From positions 62,001 through 126,000 of the forward strand of contig NIVC01002882.1 of assembly GCA_002269645.1 (NCBI GenBank): 64,000 nt of DNA, in the 5' to 3' direction. Positions 5,473 through 50,324 of this stretch are shown piece after piece (position 1 is the stretch's first letter; each line of letters begins with the position of its first letter). Source of the stretch: Macrostomum lignano (lineage: Eukaryota). The notes under the pieces are model-generated. The model had not been told where the DNA came from, searched no databases, and saw only the letters and a program-made list of their open reading frames with translations. The position numbers were made by a program, and so were the translations under genes.

Positions 5473-5499
5473 TCAGTATTTTCCGCCGCTACTGTGACC

Positions 5500-13270: not shown

Positions 13271-14600
13271 GGGCCGTATCAAGGACAACTTGTCAAGGAC
13301 AAGGCCATAGAACAATGCTTTTAAACGAGCCTCATACTTTTTTCGCCATGAATTGGCTCGTTTCCGGTCCTGAGTTATCAAGTTGTCCTTGGCCGTATGC
13401 AGAAAGCTTAGTCCAGACTAGCTAGTCCGGACTGGGTAGTTTTGTCTAGGGGCTTCAAATCGGTATGCACAAAAGCTAGTCGCGACTACCGAGATTAGTC
13501 TAGGCTATACTATACTAGTCTAAGCTAGACAGAGCGCCCAACTTTAGCGCCTAGTTTTAATGAATTTTTTAGTTCTATGGTCCAAACCCCTGTAAATGCT
13601 TTCTGTTTATATACTGGGTCGCTAACTTAACCGTTTCTATACTGGTTCTCTGTGCATATGCGTATTCTTCTGAAATGTCAGCGACAACAGACTACGAAAC
13701 AGTTCTTCTTGACGTTCTACAAGGACATTCGGCTTCTGCTTCGGCTTCGGCCCTCTGGGTTTTGATATGGAGTGAGTAGAAAATCGTTCGTAGAGTCGGT
13801 ATCCAGAATCTCCGACTAGATAGCCCTCCGATTGGGCGTCTAGAAGCGATCCGAAAAGAAAACTGTTGCGAAATATTCTCGAGTCATGGACCGAACCAGG
13901 CCATTGAGCAGTTATTTCGAGAAAGAAGTATCTCGCATCGTAGACTGCTTGGACGTTAATAGAGTGGTAGTTTTTACGATTAATGAATTCATCTGGAAAG
14001 TTCTCATCAGATGGCCTTTGAATTCGTACATGCGTACAGTCGATAGCACCGATTACATCTGCCAGTTGACTAATTTGATTAAACCCTGTTGACACTCGCC
14101 TCCGCTCAACACCTGGCTCTGGATAGCGGATGTTATTCAAGCGGAGATTCAGTATCCTGACCACTCCCCAGTAGCAGCGGGACATGGTGCTTTGGTCGAT
14201 ACCTCCAAGAGCAGGTTCTGCTGAAAGCTTCCAGTGCCGAGATAAGATAGTGTCTGGCACAGCTGTAGCATGGGAGTCAGGCTTCTGTTACGCATTGTCG
14301 TCCGTTCGAGATCTGTCTCGACAAGCTCCACAAGTGATAGAAGTGATCTAGGTTCGAACCGAAACAGCCTTTTAATTTCAACCTCCGAGAATTGTTGAAG
14401 TGGCTCCAACCCATGGATGAATGAATAGAATGGATTGCTATTCTGGCTCTGGCTATTTTCGTTTTTGACTCTTTTGCATCCGGTTCCCCCCCGTGCCTTT
14501 TCATTGGTTGATGATTGCCATAGACAATTTTCGGCCTTCGCCCCTTTCTTTCGATGCACAAGCGCTTTCGCTCGTGTTTTGAAATAAAGGGGGGTCGTTC
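13271..14600 (-). mobile_element. PIF/Harbinger element remnant with transposase pseudogene (~13780-14480)
   Basis: LGTGSFQ..GIDQSTMSR..IGAIDCTHVRI..INRKNYHSINVQ..WPGSVHDSRIF..GDSGY (HARBI1-type motifs); frameshifts, C-terminus deleted; terminus GGGCCGTATGCAGAAAGCT with CTAGTC/CTAGAC subterminal repeats. Confidence 0.92.
13280..13391. mobile_element. 112-bp MITE with perfect 13-bp TIRs inserted in the Harbinger terminus
   Basis: GCCGTAT|CAAGGACAACTTG...CAAGTTGTCCTTG|GCCGTAT; internal sequence similar to the 7846-7908 MITE. Confidence 0.85.
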
Positions 14601-18694: not shown

Positions 18695-19185
18695 CTTTGC
18701 GCTTGTGCATCGAAAGAAAGGGGCGAAGGCCGAAAACTGTCCATGGCAATCACCAACCAATGAAAAGGCACGGGGGGAACCGGATGCAAAAGAGTCAAAA
18801 ACGAAAATAGCCAGAGCCAGAATAGCAATCCATTCTATTCATTCATCCATGCTCCAACCGATCACGAAATATGCGTTGTCGACGGAGGTCTCGCTGAACT
18901 AAATCTATCGCAACCAAAATATTCATTTCTTTCAATCGTCTAAGGGCGTAGGCAATGCAAAATTAGCTATCAAGACAGCTCTAGAGCAGGTTAGGTTTTG
19001 TCTAGTCCAGGCTAACTAGTCAAAGTTTTTATGCATACCAAAGTAAGACTAAACTACCATAGACAGAACTAGGGTAGTTTTTCTATGCTAGACCGGTCTA
19101 AATTTGTGTTTCTGCATACCAAATCCGAGTCCAGACTAGCTTTTCAAGACCGGACTACCCTAGACAGAGCTTTGTGCATACGGCC
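18695..19185 (+). mobile_element. Second, deleted Harbinger copy in inverted orientation
   Basis: 18695-18860 is the reverse complement of ~14405-14575; terminus AGCTTTGTGCATACGGCCC matches the 13271 end. Confidence 0.85.
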
Positions 19186-19329: not shown

Positions 19330-20418
<1,089 letters not shown>

Positions 20419-24682: not shown

Positions 24683-25130
24683 ATGGCGCTGAGCGCCAGA
24701 CCACTCGACCAGTCCGACTCAGTTGCCGCCGACTGCTGGGACCGTCTCCTCGACCTCCAAAGAGCTGGCATCAAGACCAAATTCATCTGGGTCCCGGCTC
24801 ACTGCGGCGTGTCCGGCAACGAAGCCGCGGACGAGGCGGCCAACCGAGCTGCCGCCCTGGACCAAAGCCGCGCGCCAATTCAACTCAGCGCCGCCAAGGC
24901 AGCCATCCGCCGCTGCAGACGCGCGCTCGACACCGCCGCCACGGGACCGGCCTGGCCTCCCGCAACGGACCTGCCTAGGAAGCACCAGGTGCTCATCAAC
25001 CAACTCCGGGCGGGGACCAGCATCATCAATGGTACCACCCGTCACCGCATGGGACTCGACACGTCGCTCCTCTGCCCCGACTGCGGCGCGGAGGACACCG
25101 TCGATCACCTAATCTACCACTGGAGGCGCG
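24683..25130 (+). mobile_element. LINE RNase H + zinc knuckle fragment (I/Ingi-like)
   Basis: FIWVPAHCGVSGNEAADEAA..QLRAG..CPDCG..DTVDHL. Confidence 0.85.
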
Positions 25131-25289
25131 GGGACGGATCGAGAGCACTCAGCGGCACGCCGGTGACATGAGCTGGTGCTGGATCTCGGTCCGCTGGACG
25201 TAGGTGCTCTGCAGCTGGACCAGAGCAGTACTGTCCTGGTCGCTGTCGTGGCCGTGAATGACAGTGGCTCGAGTGGGACAATTTCCAGG

Positions 25290-27111: not shown

Positions 27112-27852
27112 ATGGGACACGAGGGGCCCTGCTGTCACGGCTGCTCCGAGTGCAGGTGAGACTGGGGGGGGGACTGAATGACCTTATCCACGTGGTTTCA
27201 TAATCTTATGAGCTGGCTCATGAACTCACTCATGAACTCACTCATGAACTCACTCATGATCTCACTCATGAATTCACTCATGAACTCACTCATGAACTCA
27301 CTCATGAACTCACTCATGAACTCACTCATGAACTCACTCATGAACTTACCCGCTCCCCCACTCACAGGACAGTCCGCAGCTACCAGAAATGGAAGTTCAG
27401 TGCCAGCCAGTCGAGGCCCTGCTGCTGCCTGGCAGTCCCCTCCAAACGGTGCTGCCACGCGCGGGGGTGCAGCAAATGCGACAAGAAGGTGTCAGTTCAA
27501 GTGGCATCACTGCAATATTGGGATATGAAAGTCTCTGCGAAACTAAAAAGGAAGAAGAAGAGGGAGAGAGGGAGAGGTGGATAGAGAAAGAAAGGGAGAG
27601 GGAGAGAGGAGGGAGAGAGGGAGTCGGGAGGGAGAGAGGGAGAGGGCGAGAGGGAGAGAAGGGGAGAGAGAGTGGAGGGAGAGGGCGAGTCAGTGTCGAT
27701 TACGAGCGCAGATGCCAAGTTCTTACTGAAATCTCACACCCCTTAGCATTTTTAACTCAACTCCCCTTAACTCCAATTGCAGCCTGAAGGGCTACTGCTG
27801 TTGCAAGCACTACTATTTCAAGACGCACAGCGAAGCCTGCGGGATTCTTTAA
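27112..27852 (+). CDS. Type-A Cys/His-rich gene A1 (exon-2 donor unresolved)
   Basis: TATAAAA at ~27055; exon 27112-27155, exon from 27368, last exon 27783-27852: MGHEGPCCHGCSECRTVRSYQKWKFSASQSRPCCCLAVPSKRCCHARGCSKCDKK...LKGYCCCKHYYFKTHSEACGIL*; intron 1 holds a 12-mer repeat (27217-27345). Confidence 0.55.
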
Positions 27853-28402
27853 TCTAAGAAGTGCCATGATGCTTCTTGACAAATCGAACAAAACACTGAC
27901 ATCAAGTGCAACGTCATATTTTTTTATACAAAACCTTTTTTTCAAATCTAAGCGCTACGAATTACGAGTATCATAAAAACTACGAAAAAAACAAATCTAG
28001 GCGCGCATACATATTTTAGCTACTGTTAGTAGTCTGTAAAGAAATTTGCTTTAATAAGATGTTGAATTCGATTGATAAAATGACAATTTGTTGTTTACTG
28101 AATTATTGATGAGTGTTAATTTTTTCTTTAAGTCTCGTAACAATTATTATCTCATAAAATAATTTACATGTAACTGGATGCAATAAATGCATGATACTTT
28201 ACTTACTTAAGCAGTTGCCAGCATCTCAGAACTATACTTTTTACATACTGCTGCTCCTAGGAAAAGTCCTAACAACAGGGTACTTCCCTGTGATCGCGCG
28301 ATTACATGCATACATAAATTGTGAACAGCATGGCAGTGTATCTGGAAAAGAGCTTTGTCTGCACACGTTTAGAAATTATTTAAAGTCAAACATTGTCTAA
28401 CA

Positions 28403-29475
28403 ATGGAGTGCTGCAGAAGACGCAACTGCAATTATTGCTTGTGAGTCACTCGCTATCGAGGTATCTTGACTGGCTGTCTCACAGGTTAGGAGTGTAATAT
28501 TGCTTGTCTAACAGGTATAACCGAGTTTTTCTGAAAGGTATTAACCTTCATCTAACAGTTAATAACCTTTCTAACAGGTATTAACCTTCGTCTAACAGGT
28601 GTATTAACCTTCGTCTAACAGGTATTAACCTTTATCTAACAGGTGTATTAACCTTCGTCTAACAGGTATTAACCTTTATCTAACAGGTGTATTAACCTTC
28701 GTCTAACAGGTATTAACCTTCGTCTAACAGGTGTATTAACCTTCGTCTAACAGGTATTAACCTTTATCTAACAGGTGTATTAACCTTCGTCTAACAGGTG
28801 TATTAACCTTCGTCTAACAGGTGTATTAACCTTCGTCTAACAGGTATTAACCTTCGTCTAACAGGTATTAACCTTCGTCTAACAGGTATTAACCTTCGTC
28901 TAACAGGTATTAACCTTTGTCTAACAGGTGTATTAACCTTCGTCTAACAGGTATTAACCTTTGTCTAACAGGTGTATTAACCTTCGTCTAACAGGTATTA
29001 ACCTTTGTCTAACAGGTAATAACCTTCGTCTAACAGGTATTAACCTTCTCTGACAGGTATTAACCTTTATCTAACGGGTAATTACTTATCTAGCAGGTAT
29101 TAACCTTCATCTGGCAGGTATTAACCTAACCTATTTACCATATGCATATAAATTTCTACGCAATCTCAACGTAGAAGAATCGAAGATTACGCCATCATGC
29201 GCGATGTTCGAGTACCCTGCTGCTGCAGACACCCCGGCTGGCTTCATCCAAATGATCTGGATTCCTGCTGCTACAACCGCTGGTGCGAGCTCTGCTATGA
29301 TCGAAATTGGTAAGTTATTAACTGATTAAGCAATCATTTCCTAAAGATGCTCAAAGCTGAAAACCTGCATCTTGAACTTGTAAATTTCAGCTTCGACGGT
29401 CCCAGAAGACGGAACAGTAGAAACGGCTATCCTCATTGCTGTTGCAAGCACCACTTTTATGAGTACGAGAGCTAA
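28403..29475 (+). CDS. Type-A Cys/His-rich gene A2, 85 aa
   Basis: Exons 28403-28440, 29175-29309, 29391-29475, both introns phase 2: MECCRRRNCNYCLRIEDYAIMRDVRVPCCCRHPGWLHPNDLDSCCYNRWCELCYDRNCFDGPRRRNSRNGYPHCCCKHHFYEYES*. Confidence 0.82.
28505..29130. repeat. 21/23-bp tandem repeat (TTAACCTTCGTCTAACAGGTA) in A2 intron 1
   Basis: Direct reading. Confidence 0.95.
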
Positions 29476-29937
29476 GAAGATTGGAAGCAAAAGTGGCTGG
29501 AAAATTGATTAAACCAATATCTGCAATATGAGGTAAACTGACACAGAATATCGGTGAAATTCTGAATTAATTGAGTCAAATACTCATTTTCACATTTCTG
29601 TTTTGATTTAACTGTTGAAATCGGTTATAAACGCGGTAGATCCCAGTTCTATTTTTAGCCTTGAGCGCTTTCCAATTTCTATTTTTAGCACAGATTTCAG
29701 TGTACAGATGTCAGTGTTCCATGTACTTTATTTTGATTTAATGCACGAAATTCTACTTCATATTTACGGTATTTAAAGTTTATTTTTTTAATAAACTAGC
29801 TAATTGTGATCGGTTATACATATAATCCATGCCATCTGCATCACTTTAACTACATTTAAAAAATACGAGTCACTTTTAGAGCTTTGCATTTCTTTGAGTA
29901 TTGTCAACTCGGGGCGGTTAAAACAGTGGATCATTAT

Positions 29938-30628
29938 AGAATAGGGTAAATACCTGTAGAATAGGGTAGATCCCTGTAGAATAGGGTAGATCCCTGTAGA
30001 ATAGGGTAAATCCCTGTAGAATAGGGTAGATCCCTGTAGAATAGGGTAAATACCTGTAGAATAGGGTAGATCCCTGTAGAATAGGGTAGATCCCTGTAGA
30101 ATAGGGTAAATCCCTGTAGAATAGGGTAGATCCCTGTAGAATAGGGTAAATACCTGTAGAATAGGGTAAATACCTGTAGAATAGGGTAGATCCCTGTAGA
30201 ATAGGGTAGATACCTGCAGAATGGGGTATATTCTGTAGAATGGGGTAGATACCTGTAGAATGGGGTAGATTCTGCAGAATGGGGTAGATCCCTGTAGAAT
30301 AGGGTAGATCCCTGTAGAATAGGGTAGATCCCTGTAGAATAGGTTAGATACCTGTAGAATGGGGTAGATCCTGCAGAATGGGGTAGATCCCTGTAGAATA
30401 GGGTAGATACCTGTAGATTGGGGTAGATACCTGTAGAATAGGGTAAATACCTGTAGAATGGGGTAGATACCTGTAGAATAGGGTAAATACCTGTAGAATG
30501 GGGTAGATCCCTGTAGAATAGGGTAGATACCTGTAGATTGGGGTAGATCCCTGTAGAATAGGGTAGATACCTGTAGATTGGGGTAGATACCTGTAGAATA
30601 GGGTAAATACCTGTAGAATGGGGTAGAT
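29938..30628. repeat. 20-bp tandem repeat (CTGTAGAATAGGGTAGATCC)
   Basis: Direct reading. Confidence 0.95.
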
Positions 30629-30677
30629 CATGTTGGCACCAGGTTGATCAAGGGTAAAACGAGATTGATTGGATCGA

Positions 30678-31125
30678 GAACTGACGTTCCTGACAACCCA
30701 AACTGATATTCCTTACTGTACAACCCAAACTGACGTTCCTGACAACCCAAACTGACGTTCCTGACAACCCAAACTGACGTTCCTGACAACCCAAACTGAC
30801 GTTCCTGACAACCCAAACTGACGTTCCTGACAACCCAATCTGACATTCCTGACAACCCAAACTGACGTTCCTGACAACCCAAACTGACGTTCCTGACAAC
30901 CCAAACTGACGTTCCTGGCAACCCAAACTGACGTTCCTGGCAACCCAAACTGACGTTCCTGGCAACCCAAACTGACGTTCCTGACAACCCAAACTGACGT
31001 TCCTGGCAACCCAAACTGACGTTCCTGACAACCCAATCTGACGTTCCTGACAACCCAAACTGACGTTCCTGACAACCCAAACTGACGTTCCTGACAATCC
31101 AAACTGACGTTCCTGACAACCCAAA
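30678..31125. repeat. 22-bp tandem repeat (CTGACGTTCCTGACAACCCAAA)
   Basis: Direct reading. Confidence 0.95.
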
Positions 31126-31732
31126 CGGGACCAAAGTGACTTAAGTTGTGTTTCTGAGTAAAGGAGTCAGTAGAGAATCTAAACAGGTGCATATAGTCAG
31201 AGTTGCTGACTTTTTCGATTTTCGTTTTCACTAATCTTTACTGTTTTTTCTATTTCTATAACTAACGCAGCACAAATTTAACGATCTGACGACAACAGGT
31301 AGTTCCGGGTGGACTTGCACGCTTTACAAGTCTAAGGATTCTGAATGAAGTTTTGAAATGAGACTTAACTGCTACTGCAAATGCCGCTTGTGTTAGCCAA
31401 CAGTTTGTCCTGACCCAGGAAACTTATCTATTGATTTGAGATTTTGGATCTCTAAAGAATCAAAAGGTTAATGGGAAGTTTTATCCAAGTGTAAGCGTCT
31501 CCAGTGACATGTGTCGAATGTTCAACCGACTTGAGTTGAAAAGCGATTTTCTAAAGTTTGAGTCAACATTGAAACACTGTGAATTATCGGGAGGCCTTAC
31601 CGTTTAATGATTGCAACAATAATTTTCAAAACGTAAACACCACGTGGTCCACTAAGCATGGAAGGTCAGCTTGCTGCTCAAGGTACAACACTCCTTCTTA
31701 CAGGGCAGTACCTTCTGGGTCATCAGTATTAT

Positions 31733-31765
31733 GGTACTGCCTGGTTTGATTATTTCTATTTAAAA
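31733..31765 (+). promoter_or_regulatory. GGTACTGCCT-N14-TATA-like promoter of A3
   Basis: Motif 31733-31742, TATTTAAAA from 31757. Confidence 0.6.
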
Positions 31766-31847
31766 CTTTGACTTTGACGAGCTGTATTGAGGGAGGAATT
31801 CCGGTCTCAAATCATTGTAAGGATCACCAGCGGCTTCCAGTGAGGCA

Positions 31848-32324
31848 ATGTCGACCTACTCTGCAGCAGGCTGTTGCAACTGCGTGAAAAAACGGAACGA
31901 CTGCGAAAACTGCGCGTAAGATATGGATTCACTGTTCGACGTTTATTCGGCGATTAATTTTATTTTTCAACTTTCAAGCTTATCAACTTTGAAAATTTCA
32001 GACGGACCAAGGCTTACGTTGCTTGGCAGAATACTAAGCTGGGTCCTCACGAGCAGCAGAGGCCTCCCTGCTGCTACATTCATCACGGGAAGAACCTCAC
32101 TGATGGCATGTGCTGCGACACAAATACCTGCCCAGTCTGCGTAAAACATCACAGGTTTGTGGAACCCATTTTGATATTTTGACAAAATTTCAATGACAGC
32201 TCTGCGCTTAGGAATCAACCGAAAATCTTTTTCAGCTTCTTTTTTTCCGGACGGGAAAAATCAACGACCTTATCCAGATTGTTGCTGCAAGCACAACGGC
32301 AAGTCGTGGAATTATAAAAAGTGA
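31848..32324 (+). CDS. Type-A Cys/His-rich gene A3 (1-bp frameshift in a T-run of exon 3)
   Basis: Exons 31848-31915, 32002-32154, 32236-32324: MSTYSAAGCCNCVKKRNDCENCARTKAYVAWQNTKLGPHEQQRPPCCYIHHGKNLTDGMCCDTNTCPVCVKHHSFFFPDGKNQRPYPDCCCKHNGKSWNYKK* after removing one T at 32240-32246. Confidence 0.75.
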
Positions 32325-33059
32325 TTAACTCTTAATTAACACTGACTGAACCAATTATGAGCTTAATATGTGCTCATTGCATTACAAGCATGACCTAATC
32401 AATGCTATCAGTGCGTGGCTGCTTATAAAGAATTGAAACGTCTTGTATTCGTAACTTGAAATTAAATAAATCATGAAATTTTGCACCGTGTTATCCATCT
32501 CGAACACAACAAGTATTTAGAGAACGGTGACTATCCGTAGCATAAATGCCTCTTGAGCAAATGCCTGACGTTTTTTCAAAACTGCCATAGTTAGCCTCAA
32601 TTAAAGCATTGTTTTTGTGTATGAAAAATAAATTAGACAGAAGTTAAAAAGTAGCCAAAAAGTCACCCACATCTACAACCCAATCGTTTAAAGTCCAAAA
32701 GTATTATTAGCTACTCAGTTGTTGCACGAAGTCTAGTTGTGTACTTTTACAAATTTACCATAGACAGTTGAACTTTTAGAAATTCTCTGCAATAATGCTC
32801 GTACTCGCAACTATAAAGTTTTATTTGCTGGCTATTTTTATAAAAGTACATTGGTTTTACTGCATTGACGACGTGTACAACACGTGCGTACACACACTAC
32901 TACGCGGTAGATTCCTGTTCTATTTTTAGAAATGATGTCCATTTTTTCCGAGAGAAAGCACACACGCTTTGAGAAAAACACCAAGTGTAAAGCCGGAAGG
33001 AATGCCACAGCTTGTAGTTGACCACCTACCAAGTTTCTGACAGTAGTGGCTCATGTTAG

Positions 33060-33615
33060 AGAGATTAGTGGGTCACGCTGCAGATATTAGTGGGTCACGC
33101 TACAGAGATTAGTGGGTCACTCTAGAGAGATTAGTGGGTCATGCTACAGAGATTAGTGGGTCACGCTACAGAGACTAGTGCGTCACGCTAGAGAAACTAG
33201 TGGGTCACGCTAGAGAGATTAGTGGGTCACGCTAGAGAGACTAGTGGGTCACGCTAGAGAGATTAGTGGGTCAGGCTAGATAGATTAGTGGGTCACGCTA
33301 GAGAGATTAGTGGGTCAGGCTAGATAGATTAGTGGGTCACGCTAGAGAGATTAGTGGGTCACGCTAGAGAGATTAGTGGGTCACGCTAGAGAAACTAGTG
33401 GGTCACGCTAGAGAGATTAGTGGGTCACGCTAGAGAGACTAGTGGGTCACGCTAGAGAGATTAGTGGGTCACGCTAGATAGATTAGTGGGTCACGCTAGA
33501 GAGATTAGTGGGTCAGGCTAGATAGATTAGTGGGTCACGCTAGAGAGATTAGTGAGTCACGCTAGAGAGACTAGTGGGTCACGCTAGAGAGATTAGTGAG
33601 TCGTGATAGAGAGAT
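33060..33615. repeat. 22-bp tandem repeat (GATTAGTGGGTCACGCTAGAGA)
   Basis: Direct reading. Confidence 0.95.
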
Positions 33616-33721
33616 TTGTGTTTCAAGCTAGAAATATGGCATGATTCATAAATGACGTAACTACAATAAAAGATGAGGCAGTTCCCTGTACCTGCCAAGT
33701 ATGCTACCTAATTGACCTCAG

Positions 33722-33752
33722 GGTACTGCCTCATAAACATATTGCTATAAAT
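33722..33752 (+). promoter_or_regulatory. GGTACTGCCT-N14-TATA promoter of A4
   Basis: Motif 33722-33731, TATAAAT from 33746. Confidence 0.65.
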
Positions 33753-33840
33753 GTTTTTATGCTAACAGGTAAGCAAGTTTATGATTTTTTATCTTTATCT
33801 CAACTATACAGCATCTTTATGAAGAGTCTGCTCAATTGAA

Positions 33841-34637
33841 ATGTCATCTTGCTGCTATTGTGTTAATCGAAGGCAAAGATGCCGGCGATGCAGGTAAAGT
33901 CGCTCACACACATCATACTAGAGCTGCAAACTAAGGAAAACATTAAAATTGATTTTTTTGCACGCAAAATTTCAGGTTCATGCAAGATTATATCGACTGG
34001 AAGAACAACCAGTTGACATACAACCAACAACCAGAGCGGACTCCGTGTTGTCATATTCACCATACACTCGAAAGTCTTACTGACGATGGCTGTTGCGACC
34101 CGGACAGATGCCAAGTTTGCATCAACAAGAGAAGGTACGTACTCTAGATTTATTAAACAACGCCAAAGTGATAATGCCAACTGACTCTTCGCTCTATTAT
34201 CAGAGCGTCGAACTCACGACTGAAAGGTCGGAGGTTCGACTCCCAAACCAACTCGGAACAATGTGTGTCCTTGAGCAAGAGACACTCAACTCTGCATTGT
34301 TTCAGTTCACCCAGCTGTAAAATGGGTGCCAGCATTAGCTGGGGTAATTGAGGGTGTGTGGCGACCCCCCAGTCCTTGGACTGAACAGCCGTACGCAGCC
34401 TTCAGCTGCGGCTGAGCTGTCGGTTGCACATCCGCCCAGTCCATTAAGACAGGTGTAGCTCGTAATTAGCTATATTAATTTAAAATCTTCGCTCTAAGGA
34501 TCAACATTAATTTAAGCATATGATACGATTTTTTCAGTGAATTTTACCACAATGGAAACCGCAGACCGCGTCCAAACTGCTGTTGCTACCATTTCTACTG
34601 GCATCAGTGCCAGACTCCGAGCTGCTCAGTTCTATGA
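33841..34637 (+). CDS. Type-A Cys/His-rich gene A4, 103 aa
   Basis: Exons 33841-33893, 33976-34134, 34538-34637, phase 2/2: MSSCCYCVNRRQRCRRCRFMQDYIDWKNNQLTYNQQPERTPCCHIHHTLESLTDDGCCDPDRCQVCINKRSEFYHNGNRRPRPNCCCYHFYWHQCQTPSCSVL*. Confidence 0.83.
34195..34460 (+). mobile_element. tRNA/CORE-like SINE copy 4, inside A4 intron 2
   Basis: GGTTCGACTCC B-box, GTGTCCTTGAGCAAG..CAGCTGTAAAATGGGTG. Confidence 0.8.
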
Positions 34638-35012
34638 GATCATTGAGTTCAGGAACTGCTGCCGCCATCAGTTTGACTGATCGAATGAAAATTACTTCAT
34701 TTTTTCATTTTTGTTTGACTCGATCATTGACTTTTCAGCTTTGAATTTTTACGAAATACGTGTTGTAGACCTAGAGTGTGAACTGTTTATTTATGTTATC
34801 TTTAAAAATCGATCTTTATTTCGCAAGAATTGTAACCTATGGATTAGCGACCAACAGGTGAATACAGCTGTTCTCTACCAATAAACTCATCAACTGAGAC
34901 TCACGAAAGGACTTACTAATTCACTTATGGACTTGCAAAGAACTCACCCAATCTTTAAGCAAAATAGATCATAAAATGCTTGTAAAAACCATGCCTGTGA
35001 CAAAACCCTAAG

Positions 35013-36003
35013 ATTAGGGTCATGTAGCCGTCACGATGGGTCATGTAGCAGTCGTGTTAGTGACATGCAGCAGTCATGTTAGGGTCATGCAGCAGTCATG
35101 TAAGGGTCATGCAGCAGTCTTGTTAGGGTCATGCAGCAGTCATGTTAGGGTCATGCAGCAGTCATGTTAGGGTCATGCAGCAGTCATGTTAGGGTCATGC
35201 AGCAGTCACGTTAGGGTCCATGCAGCAGTCATGTTAGGGTCATGCAGCAGTCATGTTAGGATCATGCAGCAGTCACGTTAGGGTCCATGCAGCAGTCATG
35301 TTAGGGTCATGCAGCAGTCATGTTAGGGTCATGCAGCAGTCATGTTAGGGTCATGCAGCAGTCATGTTAGGGTCATGCAGCAGTCACGTTAGGGTCATGC
35401 AGCAGTCATGTTAGGGTCATGCAGCAGTCATGTAAGGGTCATGCAGCAGTCTTGTTAGAGTCATACAGCAGTCATGTTAGAGTCATGCAGCAGTGATGTT
35501 AGGGTCATGCAGCAGTCATGTAAGGGTCATGCAGCAGTGATGTTAGGGTCATGCAGCAGTCATGTAAGGGTCATTCAGCAGTCTTGTTAGAGTCATGCAG
35601 CAGTCATGTTAGGGTCATGCACCGGTCATGCTAGAGTCATGCAGCATTCATGTTAGGGTCCATGCAGCATTCATGTTAGGGTCATGCAGCAGTCTTGTTA
35701 GGGTCATACAGCAGTGACGGTGGGTCATGCAGCAGTCACGTTAGGGTCATGCAGCAGTCATGTTAGGGTCATGCAGCAGTCATGTTAGGGTCATGCAGCA
35801 GTCATGTTAGGGTCATGCAGCAGTCATGTTAGGGTCATGCAGCAGTCATGTTAGGGTCATGCAGCAGTTACGTTAGGGTCATGCAGCAGTCACGTTAGGG
35901 TCATACAGCAGTCACGTTAGGGTCATACAGCAGTCGTGTTCTGATCATGCAGCAGTCATGTTAGGGTCATGCAGCAGTCATGTTAGGGTCATGCAGCAGT
36001 CAC
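35013..36003. repeat. 22-bp tandem repeat (GCAGCAGTCATGTTAGGGTCAT)
   Basis: Direct reading. Confidence 0.95.
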
Positions 36004-36081
36004 GGTGTGTCAGATGTGTTTTTCTTGTTGCTTAATAAGGTACTGACTAAACTGGATCATGAATTGCAACTGAGTTAAGGA

Positions 36082-36113
36082 GGTACTGCCTAATAATCTC
36101 ATGAGTATAAAAA
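36082..36113 (+). promoter_or_regulatory. GGTACTGCCT-N14-TATA promoter of A5
   Basis: Motif 36082-36091, TATAAAAA from 36106. Confidence 0.65.
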
Positions 36114-36216
36114 GCAGTGCCGTCTTGTCGATCAGTGGCTGCATGAATTTAAAAGAAATTGATTTAGCTACCTTGTTCCAACTGCAATCTGTTGAGTGAT
36201 TTAACTCCTAATAGAA

Positions 36217-36661
36217 ATGTCAAGCTGCTGTCGTTGCGTAGGACACCAAAGATGCGTCCGCTGCGTGTAAGTAGCGTCTGAATCATTTCTGTGTTGCTCC
36301 AGTTTATCTGAATTCGGTGTCCTTCATTTCGAAAAAAAAACATTTCAGCCTGATGAGGAAATACATTGAATGGCAAAGCAAAGCACTGAGCAGAGGTATG
36401 AGGACCCAGTGCTGCTATCTTCATCACGAGCAGGATATTCTGGCTGATGACGGTTGCTGCAAAAGAAATTGCAGTGTTTGCAACAACAACCGCAGGTTAG
36501 CTCATTTTTTGTTTTAGATATTATATAGCCTCTTAGCAACACGAAAAATATTGTAAATTTGCCTTTTCAGCAAGTACTTCTACAGCGGCAATCAACGCAA
36601 CGAGTACCCCAACTGCTGCTGCTACCATTTCTTTCCAAGTAAATATCGGGTCAATGATTAG
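36217..36661 (+). CDS. Type-A Cys/His-rich gene A5, 95 aa
   Basis: Exons 36217-36266, 36349-36495, 36571-36661, phase 2/2: MSSCCRCVGHQRCVRCVLMRKYIEWQSKALSRGMRTQCCYLHHEQDILADDGCCKRNCSVCNNNRSKYFYSGNQRNEYPNCCCYHFFPSKYRVND*. Confidence 0.83.
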
Positions 36662-37367
36662 ACAGGTACAGATCGACATGGATTGTTTGACTACAGAACC
36701 ACAATAATACGTTTTTTATAGTGTTATTTCACAATACGTCCCGTATTGTGATTATCAATAACCATTTCACTGCTAACTAAAAATCTTGAGTACCAAAACA
36801 TAAGACGTCATTATTTTCAAAAGGCGATAACAATACGAGTCATTTTTGAAGAATTCATAATTCACTTTCGGTTGCTGAAAGAATTCACATTTTGGATAAT
36901 TTTTTACCAATTCAACAAATAATCGATTGTCATATTGATGCAAGGAAGTGTATTAAAACAAATATACAATTATTCGGAATGCATGCGATTTCACATTCAT
37001 ATCTTTTTGAATATTTTTTTCCGCGTTCTAGCTTGTCAATAAATCGTTATGAAAACGAAAACTCTGAAAAACGTCAGTACAAAACATTCAATCTACTCTT
37101 TAGGTGTCTTTTCGGACACAAACACGGTAGATTCCTGTTCTATTTTAATAAGTGACAAAACCATCGCCTATGGGTTGGCCTCTTTTAGGCGTGACGCTTT
37201 ATTTTAATTTAGCAACAAAATTCAACTAAAATTCAAAATAGATTTGGGAAGTCGTCTATACATGCTGATGTGGCACCGTTCATAGTGACAATGACTTTTG
37301 AGAAACACTCAGTTACTCATTCATGCAGTCACCCACTCAGAGAACTAAGACACACTATTGACAAATA

Positions 37368-37775
<408 letters not shown>

Positions 37776-38216
37776 CTAAAATGTTAATCCCCCTTGAGCC
37801 ATGGCATCTCAGCAACTCCCCCTTGAGCCATGGCATCTCATCTTTTGCTATAACAACATCTTTAGACTCTTGGAGCAGAAAAATCTGTGGTTGAGTTGAA
37901 GTTAAAATCGCTGAACTGGTCCTTGTTAGAAGATGAAAAATGAAACTATTTGAGTTTTGCAGCTGAAAAACTTGCAGAATGTTTAATAACGAAAACGGCA
38001 TTTATTATCAGCAGTGAAATGTTTGTCAGTTTCATAGCTCTATTTAGCCATGAATCAGTTGAACCAGAGCTACTGGGAACAACCGCTTTAATCTTACAAT
38101 GCAGTACCGTGTAAACGGGTGTAGCTCGTATATGAATGGGATGCATTTTTAGTTTCCTTCAATGCTAGAAACTGCCTCAAGGAATTGCTTTTTGTTACCA
38201 GCTAAAAAGCTTAAGA

Positions 38217-38655
38217 ATGGTGGACTGCTGCAGCGGCAAATCGTTGTTTTTTTGGGATTGCGAAAATTGCACGTAAGTCAATCCAGCTGACATCTGAAAT
38301 TATTTTAATTTGAATTAGTCACTAAAAAGCGCCAGAGATATCCTGCTAACTTTCAGTAAGGTGAAGGACTTTGCCGCATTCTGGCACAATAATGGAGGCA
38401 ACGGAAGACTGTCTTGCAAGTGTTGCAAGCACTTCAGCAGCAATGCTGGATGCTACATTGTTTCCAACTGCAATGTGTGCAAGAAGTTCGGCTGGTGAGG
38501 ATGCCATGGGCAAATACTAGTACTAGCAGCTCTGTATATTTTTCCATACACATTTCTGTTGTTCTTACTCAAAATTTGGTTAAAATTTTAGTGCCAAAGA
38601 CAAGGACCACCCGAACTGCTGCTGCAGGCACTACTACATGTCTGGAGGACGATAA
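38217..38655 (+). CDS. Type-A Cys/His-rich gene A6, 85 aa
   Basis: Exons 38217-38272, 38357-38494, 38592-38655, phase 2/2: MVDCCSGKSLFFWDCENCTKVKDFAAFWHNNGGNGRLSCKCCKHFSSNAGCYIVSNCNVCKKFGCAKDKDHPNCCCRHYYMSGGR*. Confidence 0.8.
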
Positions 38656-39712: not shown

Positions 39713-40950
39713 ATGTGTCTCTGATGTTGATGGAATGTGTGCTCAATATATGGCATATTGATCTGTGCTCAGTGTGTCTTTGATGTTGATTGAATGTGTG
39801 CTCAATATGGCATATTGATCTGTGCTCAGCGTGTCTTTGATGTGGATTGAATGTGTGCTCAATATATGGCATATTGATCTGTGCTCAGTGTGTCTCTGAT
39901 GTCGATTGAATGTGTGCTCAATATATGGCGTATTGATCTGTGCTCAGTGTGTCTTTGATGTTGATTGAATGTGTGCTCAATATATGGCATATTGATCTGT
40001 GCTCAGTGTGTCTCTGATGTCGATTGAATGTGTGCTCAATATATGGCATATTGGTATGCCCTCAGTGTGTCTCTGATGTTGATTGAATGTGTGCTCAATA
40101 TATGGCATATTGATCTGTGCTCAGTGTGTCTCTGATGTTGATTGAATGTGTGCTCAATATATGGCATATTGGTATGCCCTCAGTGTGTCTCTGATGTTGA
40201 TTGAATGTGTGCTCAATATATGGCATATTGATCTGTGCTCAGTGTGTCTCTGATGTTGATTGAATGTGTGCTCAATATATGGCATATTGATCTGTGCTCA
40301 GTGTGTCTCTGATGTTGATTGAATGTGTGCTCAATATATGGCATATTGATCTGTGCTCAGTGTGTCTTTGATGTTGATTGAATGTGTGCTCAATATATGG
40401 CATATTGATCTGTGCTCAGTGTGTCTCTGATGTTGATTGAATGTGTGCTCAATATATGGCATATTGATCTGTGCTCAGTGTGTCTCTGATGTTGATTGAA
40501 TGTGTGCTCAATATATGGCATATTGGTATGCCCTCAGTGTGTCTCTGATGTTGATTGAATGTGTGCTCAATATATGGCATATTGATCTGTGCTCAGTGTG
40601 TCTCTGATGTTGATTGAATGTGTGCTCAATATATGGCATATTGATCTGTGCTCAGCGTGTCTCTGATGTTGATTGAATGTGTGCTCAATATATGGCATAT
40701 TGATCTGTGCTCAGCGTGTCTTTGATGTTGATTGAATGTGTGCTCAATATATGGCATATTGATCTGTGCTCAGTGTGTCTTTGATGTTGATTGAATGTGT
40801 GCTCAATATATGGCATATTGATCTGTGCTCAGTGTGTCTTTGATGTTGATTGAATGTGTGCTCAATATATGGCATATTGATCTGTGCTCAGTGTGTATTT
40901 GATGTTGATTGAATGTGTGCTCAATATATGAAATATTGATGTCCTCAGTG
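39713..40950. repeat. ~59-bp minisatellite, about 21 copies
   Basis: Unit GTGTCTCTGATGTTGATTGAATGTGTGCTCAATATATGGCATATTGATCTGTGCTCAGT. Confidence 0.95.
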
Positions 40951-41499
40951 TCTTTTTATTTGCTTTTATGATGTCTTTGATGTCTTTGATGTCTCTTCAG
41001 CATGTCTTCTAGGTGTCCTCATCACATTAGCCCATGGTGCACATGCATGTGTCAGTATAAAACTTACCTACTCGTAGATCCTCATACTCATAGTCACGGA
41101 AAGTTTAAAAAGTTACATAGAAAAAAATGAGTTTTTCATACAAAATAATTCTTTAAGATTCTTTATATACGCTCGTACATATCGCAAAAACCTAATTAAG
41201 AACTTGCGCCAGTGCCTTGAAGCGTACATATGGTGCATCTGTGTACTCCCCCCGATCCTGCAGTCAGAAAGTCCCAACATAATGGACAATTTTCAGGCTA
41301 GACTATGTAAATTGTCAAAACAGCACCATTGCATTGTAGAGTAGAGTCATCTAAAATTAGTCGTGACCTAAGCAAAACTTTAGTCCCTTGTTAGACTAGT
41401 TAAACTGGTGACGTATTTACTACTAGTTGAGTACGAGGTAGTAGTTTATTGAGCATATGCCATCATTCTGAATCTGGCATATGATTCTTTAGTATCAAA

Positions 41500-42459: not shown

Positions 42460-43029
42460 TCACTGCCTGAGCATGCACTCAAAGGTCTTCATGGAGTAAT
42501 CCAGTTTAAGCGCACTACCCTTCGTATCGAACAGGTAATAGAATATGCCTGTAGTATTCAGTGCAGCAGGTGGGAGCAGGTAAACACCGTTAGGATTGAT
42601 GAAGTTGCACCAGCCGAACCAGCCAGCTGATCTCTGTTGGGCGCAGCTGCAGCCACAGTCGTCATTGTCGGAGTCCGGAGTGCTGAACTGCCAGTTGTTC
42701 GGCGAGTGCTTCGCAAAAGTACGCTGTCCGACACTCGACCTGCTCGCGTCCAGGGGTCCCATCGAGCACCTGTACTTGTCGCTCGCTGGGCCAACAGAGA
42801 ACGGAGAATTCTCAGCCCAGTACCAGGTGCCGTTCCAGTCGCTGAACTCCCAGCGGACTCTCCACACTCCAGTGGCGGTGAGCTGGTGGAGCTGCTCCAG
42901 CCCCATCCAGTAGTTGAGACTCTCGCCCTGACCGAATCCGCTCGCGTAGTCCGTCCAGTTCCGGTTGAAGCTGACGGAGCCGTCGACTCGGTGCTGGAAG
43001 GTCGTCCAGCACTTCACCGGCTCCCTCAT
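42460..43029 (-). CDS. Fibrinogen-related domain (FReD) protein, terminal exon
   Basis: WTTFQHRVDGSVSFNRNWTDYASGFG..YWMGLEQLHQLT..FSTPDSDNDD..C..Q..AGWF..C..NPNGVY; CAG acceptor at 43030-43032. Confidence 0.9.
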   Translation of the reverse strand: MREPVKCWTTFQHRVDGSVSFNRNWTDYASGFGQGESLNYWMGLEQLHQLTATGVWRVRWEFSDWNGTWYWAENSPFSVGPASDKYRCSMGPLDASRSSVGQRTFAKHSPNNWQFSTPDSDNDDCGCSCAQQRSAGWFGWCNFINPNGVYLLPPAALNTTGIFYYLFDTKGSALKLDYSMKTFECMLRQ

Positions 43030-44188
43030 CTGCAGGGGCGCAAAAGTGCTGCATTTGTTTCTCCAGATCAAACGCAATCCTCACTTTAGAAGTGTTCAAG
43101 CGCACTTAGGCTTTATATAATAGATAATAGTTTCTAGGAGGGCGACATCGTCTCACGACATCCTGCGCTGAAGCTATTCTGCCCATTCCGTTGACTCCCG
43201 AGCACATGCAAGCGTGCCAATACCGTAAACACGCACACACGGGGTGTACATCGGCCCTGACTTTCTAATCGTCTGGAATGTACAGTCTCTGCGTCTTAGA
43301 GTTGTCCGCATGGCTGTGAATCGCCCGATCAGTAAGTTGATGCACAGCCCTCTGGCCTACTGTGTGAGCCGCTTTCAAGATCACTAGCAAGTAACTCACG
43401 CGCCACACTATGGCCTCTCTGTTGTGTAGCCAAGGCTTGAAGTTTTCCAGTTGAGTTGAAGTGCTAGGTGCGCACAGTTGCTTTTTTTATATTTTCGTTA
43501 TTTAAAAAAAACTACATGATCGATATTTTAACTACACTAGAAAAACTGCACGATCGATAAATTCAAGAGCTAGAGATATCACGTGATTAATAATACATTA
43601 TACAGATAATTTATCAGCTACTCTACTTAAAGTGGCAGTATAAGTAATAGACAATAATAATAATATAGGTAGCATTTACGTTATACTTGAAATTCGTAAA
43701 ATATTATCTATCATTAAGTTGGTCTGTCAGGTTACACGACACAACACTCTCCAACCGACATGTACCTGTTGCTCATTCGCTACGAGTTGTACAACCCACA
43801 GCCGGTGCAGGAGGTGTCGCTTCTAACGCCGCAATCAACCGTCGAGGACAGTCGAGAGGACAGGCTGTTTTTCTGCGACGCTGTCGCTCTTTTCAGGCTT
43901 TTGTGCCAGCAAGTTTTCTTGTATTTTTGTTGAGACATCATCTTGTCTTCTTCAGGGGGCGCACTTGTCGTTTTTAATATTCTTGACTACATCCTGTGGA
44001 CTGCTAAGAAAGCTGCATGACCAGCTGGTTGTCCTGTTGACAAAGGTCAGCCATGCTCAACATTGAAATGACCCAAAAACATGAGTCAACTGGCATCCTG
44101 AGCATTGTTGCTGCTATCTGACCCGAGACTGTTAGACAGTACTTTATTAAATCTGAGACTTGACCCTCGGATATTTCATCTCACTCAC

Positions 44189-47871: not shown

Positions 47872-50324
47872 ATGTCTTCATCCAAGGCGGAGGACGGTCT
47901 CACAGAGGAGCAGATCGAGGAGTTCCGTGAGGCCTTCTCACTATTCGACAAGGATGGAGACGGCACCATCACGAACAAGGAGTTGGCAGTTGTCATGCAA
48001 GCTCTGGGACAAAATCCCACACCTGAGGAGCTTAAGGTGAGCCAAATCTAGTTTATGACTGAGTGAGCTAGCAGTCTAGATTATGACTGAGTGAACTCGC
48101 ACTCTAGATTATGACTGAGTGAGCTAGCAGTCTAGATTATGACTGAGTGAACTGGCAGTCTAGATTATGACTGAGTGAACTGGCAGTCTAGTTTATGACT
48201 GAGTGAACTAGCAGTCTAGATTATGACTGAGTGAACTATCAGTCTAGATTATGACTGAGTGAACTAGCAGTCTAGATTATGACTGAGTGAACTAGCAGTC
48301 TAGATTATGACTGAGTGAACTAGCAGTCTAGATTATGACTGAGTGAACTAGCAGTCTAGATTATGACTGAGTTAACTGGCACTCTAGATTATGACTGAGT
48401 GAACTGGCAGTCTAGTTTATGACTGAAATCATCGTCTACTTTCGAAGATCGCATGGCCATCTCTCTCTCTCCCCCAGTGGACAAAGCAGTTCGCCTGTAC
48501 GCATACGCTATGACACAGCGACATTCTCAGAGATTACAGAATACATTTGCTAATGAACCAATACCTAGGAGTGACTCTATACATGTATGCTTCTTTATAT
48601 CGTGGAAAAAAGCTGCATGCATCTAAGAATTTTTGTGTCGCAGAGAGAGAGACAGAGAAGCAGATGGAAATGCATTACCAAACTGCATGCCAGTGCTCCC
48701 GCATATTACTCATCATTGCTAGCGACTGTGGGTTCCATATAGGAACTTGATGGGATCTGTTCCGTGCAATCGCTACGAGAGGAGGCTGTACTCAATGCAT
48801 TGAGAGCTCTTGCTAGCAATTTTATTTTGCATCATAGCAGCAGCTCCTACTCACGTGAGCACTGCGTCCCAGAGCCACATGAGTGGTTGGTGAAGGCCAA
48901 ATTTATATTAATTCTTAATTAGTGATGCCCCATCATTTCGGCTAGAGGATACGGCGTTTTATGCCGCCAGTTTGTAAAACTATTAATGCTCCAGTGGTAT
49001 GAGGGGAATAGACCTGCGTTTAATGGGGTTTGACCTGGCGTGGGGATGAGGGAGGGCTGCCGCTGGGGCTGGGCGGGTTGGGGTGGGGTGCAAATAGGGA
49101 TCGCAGTCTGATAATTGCTTTGAGTCTCAGAAAAACTGCGTTGCCATCTGCATTAACCTTGGTTCTCAACCATTCAGCGATGGAAGGCTGATGATGCAGA
49201 GGAGACTGTAGATGCTGTAAATGAGACGGTAGATGCTGTAGAGGGATACTGTAGATGCTGTAACTGAGATGGTAGATGCTTTAGATGAGACTATAGATGC
49301 TGCAGATGAGACTTTGATGCTGTAAATGAGACTGTAGATCCAGGTGTAGATGAGACTGTAGATGCTGTAGATGAGACTGTAGATGCTGTAGATGAGACTG
49401 TAGATGCTGTAGATGAGACTGTAGATGCTATAGGTGATCACTGTAGATGCTGTAGATGAGTCTGTAGATGAGACTGTAGATGCTGCAGATGAGTTTGTAA
49501 ATGAGACTGTAGATGCTATAGGTGATCACTGTAGATGCTGTAAATGAGACTGTAGATGCTATAGGTGATCACTGTAGATGCTGTAAATGAGACTGTAGAT
49601 GCTGTAGATGAGACTGCAGATGCTGTAAATGAGACTGTAGATGCTATAGGTGATCACTGTAGATGCTGTAAATGAGACTGTAGATGCTGTAGATGAGACT
49701 GTAGATGCTGTAGATGAGACTGCAGATGCTGTAGATGAGACTGCAGATGCTGTAGATGAGACTGCAGATGCTGTAAATGAGACTGTAGATGCTGCCTTGT
49801 GGCTGTAAAAGTAGATGAGGCTGTATAAGGAAGGCAGCTGCACTCAGTGGTGCAGGACCTAAAAAATCAGTGACCTGTCAGCACTCCGCAACCCCAACAA
49901 TCCCCAGGAGATGATCCGCGAGGTTGATCAGGACGGCTCCGGCAGCATTGAATTCGACGAATTTCTCGACATGATGAAGAAGCAAATGAACAGCTCCGAC
50001 TCCGAGGAGGAGGTCCGACGCGCCTTCCGCCTGTTCGACGCTGACGGAGACGGCTTCCTGAGCGCCACCGAGCTGCGCCAGGTGATGCAGAACCTCGGCG
50101 AGAGGCTCACAGCCGAGGAGGTCGAGGCGATGATCGAGGAGGCTGACACCGACCGCGACGGCCAGGTGAGCTACGTAGAGTTTGCCAAGATCATGGGCGT
50201 CTGTGTTGGAGGCGGCGGTGGTGGCAGTGGCGGCGGCGGTGGCACCGACGAAGATCAAGGCGAACCCGGAGCGGCCACCGGCAGCGGCGGACCTTGCAGA
50301 AGCAAGGAGGGCACAGCTGTGTGA
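47872..50324 (+). CDS. Calmodulin-like protein, four EF hands, ~193 aa with Gly-rich C-terminal extension
   Basis: Exons 47872-48036 + 49908-50324 (phase 0): [32 protein letters not shown]|[43 protein letters not shown]; intron holds 28-mer (48047-48425) and 21-mer (49200-49795) repeats. Confidence 0.93.

What the first reader, a model, noticed from the sequence alone, without database searches (positions are those of the whole stretch)
31704..36113. Shared promoter grammar: GGTACTGCCT exactly 14 bp before the TATA box in A3, A4, A5
Seen: GGTACTGCCT at 31733, 33722 and 36082, each followed after 14 unrelated bases by TATTTAAAA/TATAAAT/TATAAAA. Extra copies or variants: GGCAGTACC (reverse) 31704, GGTACTGAC 36039, GCAGTACC 38101 upstream of A6, GGTACTTCC ~28279 upstream of A2. 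Surrounding sequence is not alignable. Inference: a binding site for a dedicated transcription factor co-regulating the cluster; I cannot assign the factor.
Basis: partly seen in the sequence, partly recalled or inferred. Interest (0 to 1): 0.7.

Follow-up and report, generated by a model that had tools for sequence, protein, structure and literature searches.

The report
Shared promoter motif in flatworm gene cluster
Three neighbouring copies of a small cysteine-rich protein gene in the flatworm Macrostomum lignano keep the same 10-letter DNA word exactly 14 letters upstream of their TATA box while the rest of their promoters has diverged to random, so it is most likely an ordinary but previously undescribed transcription-factor binding site.

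Summary
GGTACTGCCT occurs exactly three times in 64 kb (0.09 expected), at 31733, 33722 and 36082. Each copy lies 14 nt upstream of a TATA box and 91-111 nt upstream of the ATG of genes A3, A4 and A5.

The window is Macrostomum lignano contig NIVC01002882.1. A1-A6 are six head-to-tail, three-exon paralogs. They encode 77-103 aa cysteine-rich proteins found only in this species.

Aligned on the motif, the three promoters are 25-32% identical outside the 10-mer, which is random. Neutral retention and chance are therefore excluded (about 3e-10 for a shared 10-mer in register). Seven of the eight copies with at most one mismatch lie within 130 nt upstream of the family's TATA boxes.

A3-A5 each carry a second, degenerate copy 30-46 nt further upstream, in either orientation. 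A2 and A6 have one variant copy at other spacings, and A1 has none.

The best reading is a selectively maintained proximal-promoter element, probably a transcription-factor site that acts in a fixed position relative to TBP/TFIID. Factor binding, co-expression and the exact transcription start sites remain untested. "Dedicated" and "cluster-wide" are not shown. This is a new member of a known kind, of moderate interest mainly because M. lignano transgenesis makes it easy to test.

The parts
31733..31742 (+). A3 proximal copy, GGTACTGCCT, 14 nt before the TATA
31703..31712 (-). A3 distal inverted copy, GGTACTGCCC, 30 nt upstream of the proximal copy
31757..31765 (+). A3 TATA-like box, TATTTAAAA, 91 nt before the ATG
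31848..32323 (+). A3 gene (exons 31848-31915, 32002-32154, 32236-32323). Equivalent to BOX15_Mlig005498g2 (P0001) apart from one extra T in the T-run of exon 3, which shifts the frame in this copy
33722..33731 (+). A4 proximal copy, GGTACTGCCT, 14 nt before the TATA
33676..33685 (-). A4 distal inverted copy, GGAACTGCCT. With its flanks it matches the proximal copy at 15 of 16 positions (CAGGG[T/A]ACTGCCTCAT)
33688..33696 (+). A4 weak third copy, GTACCTGCC (one extra base)
33746..33752 (+). A4 TATA box, TATAAAT, 95 nt before the ATG
33841..34637 (+). A4 gene (exons 33841-33893, 33976-34134, 34538-34637), 103 aa. This is my own gene model; intron 2 holds a tRNA-derived SINE
36082..36091 (+). A5 proximal copy, GGTACTGCCT, 14 nt before the TATA
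36039..36048 (+). A5 distal direct copy, GGTACTGACT. It varies among genome copies (AGTACTGAC in L002, GGTACTGGC in L001)
36106..36113 (+). A5 TATA box, TATAAAAA, 111 nt before the ATG. An initiator-like TCAGT lies at 36134-36138, with its A 30 nt after the first T of the TATA
36217..36661 (+). A5 gene (exons 36217-36266, 36349-36495, 36571-36661). The translation equals BOX15_Mlig028464g1 (P0007) exactly
38099..38108 (-). A6 inverted variant, GGTACTGCAT, 20 nt before TATATGAA (38129)
38217..38655 (+). A6 gene (exons 38217-38272, 38357-38494, 38592-38655). The translation equals BOX15_Mlig002597g1 (P0004)
28279..28288 (+). A2 variant, GGTACTTCCC, 24 nt before CATAAAT (28313)
28403..29475 (+). 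A2 gene (exons 28403-28440, 29175-29309, 29391-29475). The translation equals BOX15_Mlig004807g1 (P0005)
27112..27852 (+). A1 gene, the most divergent paralog. It has a TATAAAAT at 27055 but no copy of the motif

Best explanation
GGTACTGCCT is a promoter-proximal cis-regulatory element of a lineage-specific, tandemly duplicated gene family in Macrostomum lignano.

Shown:
- A3, A4 and A5 keep the exact 10-mer on the coding strand, 14 bp upstream of the TATA box.
- All other promoter sequence in these three genes has diverged to random.
- Each of the three promoters carries a second, degenerate copy 30-46 bp further upstream, in either orientation.
- A2, A6 and the A7 paralog carry single variants (consensus GG[T/A]ACT[G/T/A][C/A]C) at other distances.

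Inferred:
- A sequence-specific DNA-binding protein recognises the element.
- The fixed distance from the TATA box (about -55 to -46 from a start site roughly 30 bp after the TATA) lets it contact or stabilise TBP/TFIID-TFIIA/B on one face of the helix. This would give the three genes a common, probably tissue-specific, transcriptional input.
- The distal copies add cooperative or redundant binding.

The factor and the tissue are unknown. The only hint is a source label, 'Sperm protein', on one fused gene model.
For: - Exact 10-mer: 3 matches against 0.09 expected.
- Identical 14-nt gap to the TATA in all three genes.
- Flanks at random identity, 25-32%, although the proteins are only 41-52% identical. 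The duplications are therefore old and neutral sequence is saturated.
- Probability of a 10-mer shared in register by three random 150-nt promoters is about 3e-10, or about 6e-6 with any offsets.
- 7 of the 8 hits with at most one mismatch in 64 kb lie within 130 nt upstream of family TATA boxes, which make up 1.2% of the window (P about 3e-13).
- A de novo k-mer scan of seven promoters gives GCAGTACC as the top shared 8-mer, ahead of everything except the TATA.
- The module is intact in every genome copy fetched, including a roughly 85%-identical A5-like paralog on another contig. There the motif sits in the longest invariant block upstream of the TATA.
- In A6, window and L002 differ at 10 of 140 promoter positions, but none lies between the motif and the TATA.
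- The gene models derive from a transcriptome-based annotation. One partial CDS starts 40 nt after the A6 TATA, which fits a TATA-directed start.
- In A4 and A5, only about 110 and 100 bp of unique DNA separate the upstream minisatellite from the TATA. The regulatory region is therefore probably compact.
Against: - There is no binding, expression or transcription start data for these genes. I found none in the papers and supplements searched.
- A1 lacks the motif. A2 and A6 have different spacing or orientation, so a single rule does not cover the cluster.
- The independent evidence comes from three paralogs only. The other genome copies are near-identical or recently converted and add little.
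- The motif could not be compared with a transcription-factor motif database, and the rest of the genome could not be scanned.
- The A4 leader would contain two short upstream ORFs if transcription starts about 30 nt after its TATA. That is unusual but not excluding.
Confidence: 0.7

Rival explanations
1. The 10-mer and the TATA together form a bipartite core promoter. It would be read by a specialised basal complex (a SNAPc-like or tissue-specific TBP/TAF variant) rather than by a conventional activator, and the strict 14-bp spacing would be the defining feature.
For: Identical spacing in three otherwise unrelated promoters. In the fixed-spacing copies the orientation is always the same. No other shared promoter sequence exists.
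Against: Only 10 bp are conserved, shorter than known PSE-type elements. The degenerate copies work, if at all, in both orientations and at 20-60 bp from the TATA, which is typical of activator sites. The downstream genes are spliced protein-coding genes, and no small RNA is present.
Confidence: 0.13
2. The motif is a neutral leftover of the ancestral promoter, or a product of short-tract gene conversion between paralogs, with no function of its own.
For: The genes are tandem duplicates. Recombination or conversion does occur in this cluster: the L001 A3-like copy is 94-100% identical to the window's A3 over window 30900-32100, and only 78-90% identical over the next 300 nt.
Against: Flanks on both sides are at random identity. 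A neutral relic would not leave exactly 10 of 10 bases in three genes and nothing else. Conversion tracts are normally much longer than 10 bp and would carry the 14-nt spacer, which is unrelated among the genes. The extra degenerate copies in both orientations are not explained.
Confidence: 0.05
3. The motif is a general, genome-wide M. lignano promoter or chromatin element (for example an insulator or nucleosome-positioning word) that merely happens to be visible here.
For: The genome could not be scanned. One extra GGTACTGCCC lies outside a promoter, at L001 19140.
Against: Within 64 kb the motif is absent upstream of the other genes (EF-hand gene, fibrinogen-like gene, the 56-62 kb gene). 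The only outside hit with at most one mismatch lies in a coding ORF.
Confidence: 0.07
4. Chance coincidence.
For: None beyond the small number of genes.
Against: 0 of 100 shuffles reach 3 exact copies. The probabilities for in-register sharing and for clustering in promoters are 3e-10 and 3e-13.
Confidence: 0.01

Closest known systems
Chorion-gene hexamer TCACGT of silkmoth and Drosophila eggshell gene clusters
   Same: A short word shared by the promoters of clustered, co-ordinately expressed structural-protein paralogs. It lies a short distance upstream of the TATA box, in promoters that otherwise differ, and is essential for expression (PMC4639761; the spacing to the TATA is from my own knowledge).
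   Different: Different sequence and different phylum. In chorion genes function and binding factors were shown experimentally; here nothing is tested. The chorion promoters are bidirectional between gene pairs, whereas here the genes are head-to-tail.
ELT-1 (GATA) element of the C. elegans major sperm protein multigene family
   Same: A promoter element largely confined to one lineage-specific multigene family of small proteins. According to PMC3343087, the ELT-1 element is present in under 5% of sperm genes, mostly MSP genes.
   Different: The GATA motif has a known factor. Our motif contains no GATA, and sperm expression of our family is only hinted at by a database label.
Position-dependent proximal activator elements next to a TATA box, such as the histone H2B octamer or the Drosophila beta2-tubulin beta2UE1 at about -50 (own knowledge, not tested here)
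   Same: A 8-14 bp element at about -50, with constrained distance to the core promoter, sufficient together with a short promoter for gene-class-specific or tissue-specific expression.
   Different: No sequence similarity. No functional data for the M. lignano element.
snRNA-type PSE-TATA promoters (SNAPc; own knowledge)
   Same: Fixed spacing between an upstream element at about -55 and a TATA box.
   Different: The downstream genes are spliced mRNA genes, not small RNAs. The conserved block is only 10 bp, and the extra copies occur in either orientation.

Membership tests
Promoter-proximal transcription-factor binding site shared by paralogs | Over-represented relative to chance and concentrated in promoters | tested here: met
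   3 exact copies against 0.09 expected. 7 of 8 hits with at most one mismatch lie in 1.2% of the window.
Promoter-proximal transcription-factor binding site shared by paralogs | Conserved beyond neutral expectation while the flanks diverge | tested here: met
   Flanks are 25-32% identical, against 10 of 10 in three genes. P about 3e-10.
Promoter-proximal transcription-factor binding site shared by paralogs | Lies upstream of the transcription start site | tested here: inconclusive
   It is upstream of TATA boxes that lie 88-111 nt before the ATGs. For A6, an annotated partial CDS starts 40 nt after the TATA. No 5'-end data are available for A3-A5.
Promoter-proximal transcription-factor binding site shared by paralogs | Bound by a sequence-specific protein, and mutation changes expression | not testable with these tools
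   Needs EMSA, one-hybrid and transgenic reporters.
Promoter-proximal transcription-factor binding site shared by paralogs | Target genes are co-expressed | tested here: inconclusive
   The gene ids were not found in any full text or in the supplements of five M. lignano papers.
Known transcription-factor motif (JASPAR/CIS-BP) | Significant match to a catalogued matrix | not testable with these tools
   No motif library was on hand. A literature string search returned only primers and unrelated sequences.
snRNA-type PSE-TATA promoter | Drives a small non-coding RNA gene | tested here: not met
   No Rfam or tRNA hit in the window. Downstream are three-exon coding genes whose translations equal annotated proteins.
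snRNA-type PSE-TATA promoter | Fixed distance between the upstream element and the TATA | tested here: met
   14 nt in A3, A4, A5 and in all their genome copies.
Transposon-derived promoter (LTR or MITE end) | Similarity extends over the element, and repeated flanks are present | tested here: not met
   No similarity beyond the 10-mer and the TATA.
TFIIB recognition element (BREu) | Immediately abuts the TATA; consensus SSRCGCC | tested here: not met
   A 14-nt unrelated spacer intervenes and the sequence is different. The consensus is from my own knowledge.

The most novel reading that the evidence does not exclude
GGTACTGCCT-N14-TATA is a new bipartite core-promoter class in macrostomid flatworms. 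It would be read by a specialised, possibly germline-specific, basal transcription complex, and would mark a wider set of lineage-specific (perhaps sperm) genes across the genome rather than just this cluster.
Probability: 0.1. Interest if true: 0.6.

Novelty: new member of a known kind. Interest (0 to 1): 0.35.

Why it matters
I found no cis-regulatory motif described for M. lignano in the papers I searched. This species is reported as the only flatworm with stable transgenesis (PMC8717057), and published reporters use 1-2.5 kb upstream fragments (PMC5730564).

A 10-bp element with a strict position relative to the TATA box, inside promoters with only about 100 bp of unique sequence, would give two things. 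It would be a directly testable minimal tissue-specific promoter, and a handle (by one-hybrid or pull-down) on a flatworm transcription factor.

It is also a clean example of a 'paralogous footprint'. Three old duplicates have kept nothing of their promoter except this word and the TATA box. The principle itself, a family-specific proximal element, is well known.

Tried and rejected
- **Expression data.** I searched full texts for the six gene ids and the supplements of five M. lignano papers. Nothing was found.
- **Cloned promoters.** I searched the cloned tissue-specific promoters in the supplement of PMC5730564 for the motif. No occurrence.
- **Literature search for the motif string**. It returned only primers and unrelated sequences.
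- **Transcript contigs for 5' ends.** P0007 returned only the genome contig. No RNA-derived contigs exist for any family member.
- **Wider homologs.** The word-indexed search and the exhaustive HMM search of 1.84 billion representatives found M. lignano proteins only. There was no PDB sequence match.
- **Structure prediction.** Mean pLDDT was 46.5, which is unusable, so I ran no fold search.
- **Footprinting with the diverged genome copy L001.** The A3 promoter there is 94-100% identical because of recent recombination or conversion, so it is not independent. The A5-like copy is about 85% identical throughout, which gives low resolution.
- **Small-RNA promoter idea.** Rejected because there are no Rfam or tRNA hits.
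- **Resemblances recalled from memory** (Tramtrack GGTCCTGC, NF-kB, ETS, Myb, SIX, THAP, the X-box). Each fails at core positions. I treat them as leads only, not as tests.
- **Proximity to minisatellites.** Judged uninformative, because tandem arrays cover 26% of the window.
Full report
**1. Observation**

GGTACTGCCT occurs exactly three times in the 64-kb window, at 31733, 33722 and 36082, all on the + strand. Dinucleotide shuffles give 0.09 on average and never three.

Reading the sequence and anchoring on the TATA boxes shows the same 14-nt gap in each case:
- A3: GGTTTGATTATTTC, then TATTTAAA at 31757.
- A4: CATAAACATATTGC, then TATAAAT at 33746.
- A5: AATAATCTCATGAG, then TATAAAA at 36106.

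**2. What the locus is**

The window is eukaryotic. A profile of the six conceptually spliced proteins hits only Macrostomum lignano hypothetical proteins. The spliced A2, A5 and A6 translations equal BOX15_Mlig004807g1, Mlig028464g1 and Mlig002597g1 exactly. Contig look-ups place the window at NIVC01002882.1:62001-126000.

A1-A6 (27112-38655) are six head-to-tail, three-exon genes for proteins of 77-103 aa. Thirteen Cys and one His are invariant, and I saw no N-terminal signal-peptide-like stretch (by eye; not tested).

An exhaustive HMM search of 1.84 billion representative proteins finds no relative outside this species. There is no PDB sequence match, and the AlphaFold model is unusable (pLDDT 46.5). 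The only functional hint is the label 'Sperm protein', which one source gives to a fused A3-like/A2 gene model (P0008). This is a label, not evidence.

The annotation derives from a transcriptome assembly with experimentally supported gene boundaries (PMC5730564). The genes are therefore transcribed.

**3. Is the shared word more than chance or common descent?**

- *Flanks.* Anchored on the motif without gaps (-90 to +140), A3/A4/A5 are 25.5%, 31.8% and 26.4% identical outside the 10-mer. The random expectation from base composition is 25.7%. The proteins are only 41-52% identical, so neutral sequence is saturated.
- *Probability.* The chance that three random 150-nt promoters share a 10-mer in the same register is about 3e-10. 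With any offsets it is about 6e-6.
- *Concentration in promoters.* Of the eight copies in the window with at most one mismatch, seven lie within 130 nt upstream of the family's TATA boxes. That region is 1.2% of the sequence (P about 3e-13). The eighth, at 58462, lies inside a coding ORF on the other strand.
- *Unbiased scan.* A k-mer scan of seven family promoters returns GCAGTACC (A3-A6) as the top shared 8-mer. GCAGTA and AGTACC also occur in A2. Otherwise only TATA words are shared.

I therefore reject chance, a neutral relic and a transposon-derived promoter.

**4. Anatomy**

| Gene | Copies of the motif |
|---|---|
| A3, A4, A5 | Proximal copy: exact, on the coding strand, 14-nt gap to the TATA |
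| A3 | Distal copy: inverted GGTACTGCCC, 30 nt upstream of the proximal copy |
| A4 | Distal copy: inverted GGAACTGCCT, 46 nt upstream; with its flanks it matches the proximal copy at 15 of 16 positions |
| A5 | Distal copy: direct GGTACTGACT, 43 nt upstream |
| A2 | One direct variant, GGTACTTCCC, 24 nt before CATAAAT |
| A6 | One inverted variant, GGTACTGCAT, 20 nt before TATATGAA |
| A7 (intact only in L001) | Inverted GGAACTACC, about 50 nt before a TATA-like word |
| A1 | None |

The consensus is GG[T/A]ACT[G/T/A][C/A]C. In A4 and A5, only about 110 and 100 bp of unique DNA lie between the upstream minisatellite and the TATA.

**5. Other genome copies**

Two further contigs carry the cluster. 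L002 (NIVC01000905.1) is nearly identical. L001 (NIVC01000551.1) is rearranged and more diverged.

The motif-N14-TATA module is intact in every copy of A3, A4 and A5. This adds little independent evidence, for three reasons:
- The L001 A3-like gene is 94-100% identical to the window up to about 32100 and only 78-90% identical over the next 300 nt. That indicates recent recombination or conversion.
- The A3 and A4 promoters of L002 are identical to the window.
- The A5-like copy in L001 is about 85% identical throughout.

Still, in that A5-like copy the motif lies in the longest invariant block upstream of the TATA, while the distal copy varies. In A6, the 10 differences between window and L002 all lie upstream of the motif-to-TATA block.

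**6. Transcription start**

No 5'-end data could be reached. The evidence is indirect:
- The partial CDS of the L002 A6 copy (P0006) begins at the equivalent of window 38169, 40 nt after the first T of the TATA.
- A5 has TCAGT at 36134-36138, with its A 30 nt after the first T of the TATA.
- The TATA boxes lie 57-111 nt before the ATGs.

This fits TATA-directed initiation but does not prove it. A4 would carry two short upstream ORFs in its leader.

**7. Mechanism**

The best-supported reading (confidence 0.7) is a proximal-promoter binding site for a sequence-specific factor. In the A3-A5 subfamily it acts in a fixed position relative to TBP/TFIID, helped by a second, looser copy upstream.

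A stricter version (0.13) is that the word and the TATA form a bipartite core promoter read by a specialised basal complex. The orientation-independent, variably spaced degenerate copies argue for an activator-type site. The identical spacing of the exact copies keeps the stricter version alive.

**8. Comparison with known systems**

The closest analogues are family-specific proximal elements:
- The chorion hexamer TCACGT, shared by clustered eggshell genes and essential for their expression (PMC4639761).
- The ELT-1 element, largely confined to the nematode MSP multigene family (PMC3343087).
- Position-dependent elements next to TATA boxes, such as the H2B octamer and beta2UE1 (own knowledge).

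An snRNA-type PSE-TATA promoter shares the fixed spacing but fails on gene type.

I could not compare the motif with a transcription-factor matrix library. The resemblances I recalled (Tramtrack, NF-kB, ETS, Myb, SIX, THAP) fail at core positions and are leads only. A text search for the string gave nothing relevant.

**9. Verdict**

The sequence evidence supports a functional cis-element. Neither 'dedicated factor' nor 'co-regulating the cluster' is shown, and A1 lies outside the pattern.

This is a new member of a well-known kind of element. Interest is moderate (0.35), mostly because it is short, sharply defined and directly testable in a transgenic flatworm.

Noticed in passing
window 32240-32246: The T-run in A3 exon 3 has 7 T in the window (and in L003) but 6 T in L002 and L001. 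This shifts the frame of the last exon. A3 is not called as a gene on this contig. It is either a real frameshift or a homopolymer assembly error.
   Followed up: partly
window ~31290-31480; L001 15263-16636: A relic of a seventh family member (A7) lies upstream of A3 in the window; its exon 1 region is deleted. An intact three-exon copy exists only on contig NIVC01000551.1.
   Followed up: partly
L001 9000-10700 vs window 30900-32700: The A3-like gene of L001 is a mosaic. It is 94-100% identical to the window through the promoter, exon 1, intron 1 and most of exon 2. It is then 78-90% identical over the next 300 nt and unalignable beyond about 32400. This suggests recent gene conversion or unequal exchange. 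In L001 the gene also sits between exon 1 and exons 2-3 of the A2 copy.
   Followed up: partly
window ~34200-34450; L001 ~18716-18990: A tRNA-derived SINE lies in intron 2 of A4. The same SINE family is inserted in the last exon of the A5-like copy in L001, which also has a 19-nt deletion at the predicted start site, so that copy is probably a pseudogene.
   Followed up: no
whole window (29 arrays, e.g. 29937-31126, 33044-33632, 35014-36002, 39714-40951): Tandem arrays with 4-59 bp units cover 26% of the window. Every intergenic spacer of the cluster, and A2 intron 1 and A1 intron 1, hold a different minisatellite. (CAGA)n/(TGTC)n arrays recur six times.
   Followed up: partly
P0008 (UniRef A0A1I8HKB7): A 148-aa gene model from an older annotation fuses A3-like exons 1-2 to A2 exons 2-3 and is named 'Sperm protein' by its source. 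P0001 is labelled 'DUF2769 domain-containing', although no Pfam hit is on record.
   Followed up: no
window 33653-33660 and 28360-28366: A CRE-like TGACGTAA lies 93 nt before the A4 TATA, and a metal-response-element-like TGCACAC lies in the A2 leader. Both are single occurrences and may be chance.
   Followed up: no
window 33781-33840 and 36143-36199: There are short upstream ORFs in the predicted leaders of A4 (13 and 6 codons) and A5 (18 codons, starting 7 nt after the predicted start site).
   Followed up: no
window 5473-6665(-), 9875-10450(+), 13637-14260(-), 19406-20299(+), 24683-25171(+): Fragments of mobile elements: non-LTR retrotransposon endonuclease/RT and RNase H ORFs, and ORFs resembling piggyBac-like and Harbinger-like transposases. 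These were identified by eye from the ORF translations only.
   Followed up: no
window 49911-50324(+), 42460-43077(-), 56493-62581(-): Other genes: an EF-hand (calmodulin/troponin C-like) exon, a fibrinogen-related-domain exon, and a multi-exon gene with an N-terminal hydrophobic segment. None has the motif upstream. The copy at 58462 (CGTACTGCCT) lies inside a coding ORF of the last gene.
   Followed up: partly
L001 19140-19149: An extra GGTACTGCCC lies downstream of the A5-like gene, not next to a TATA box or a family gene. Its meaning is unknown.
   Followed up: no
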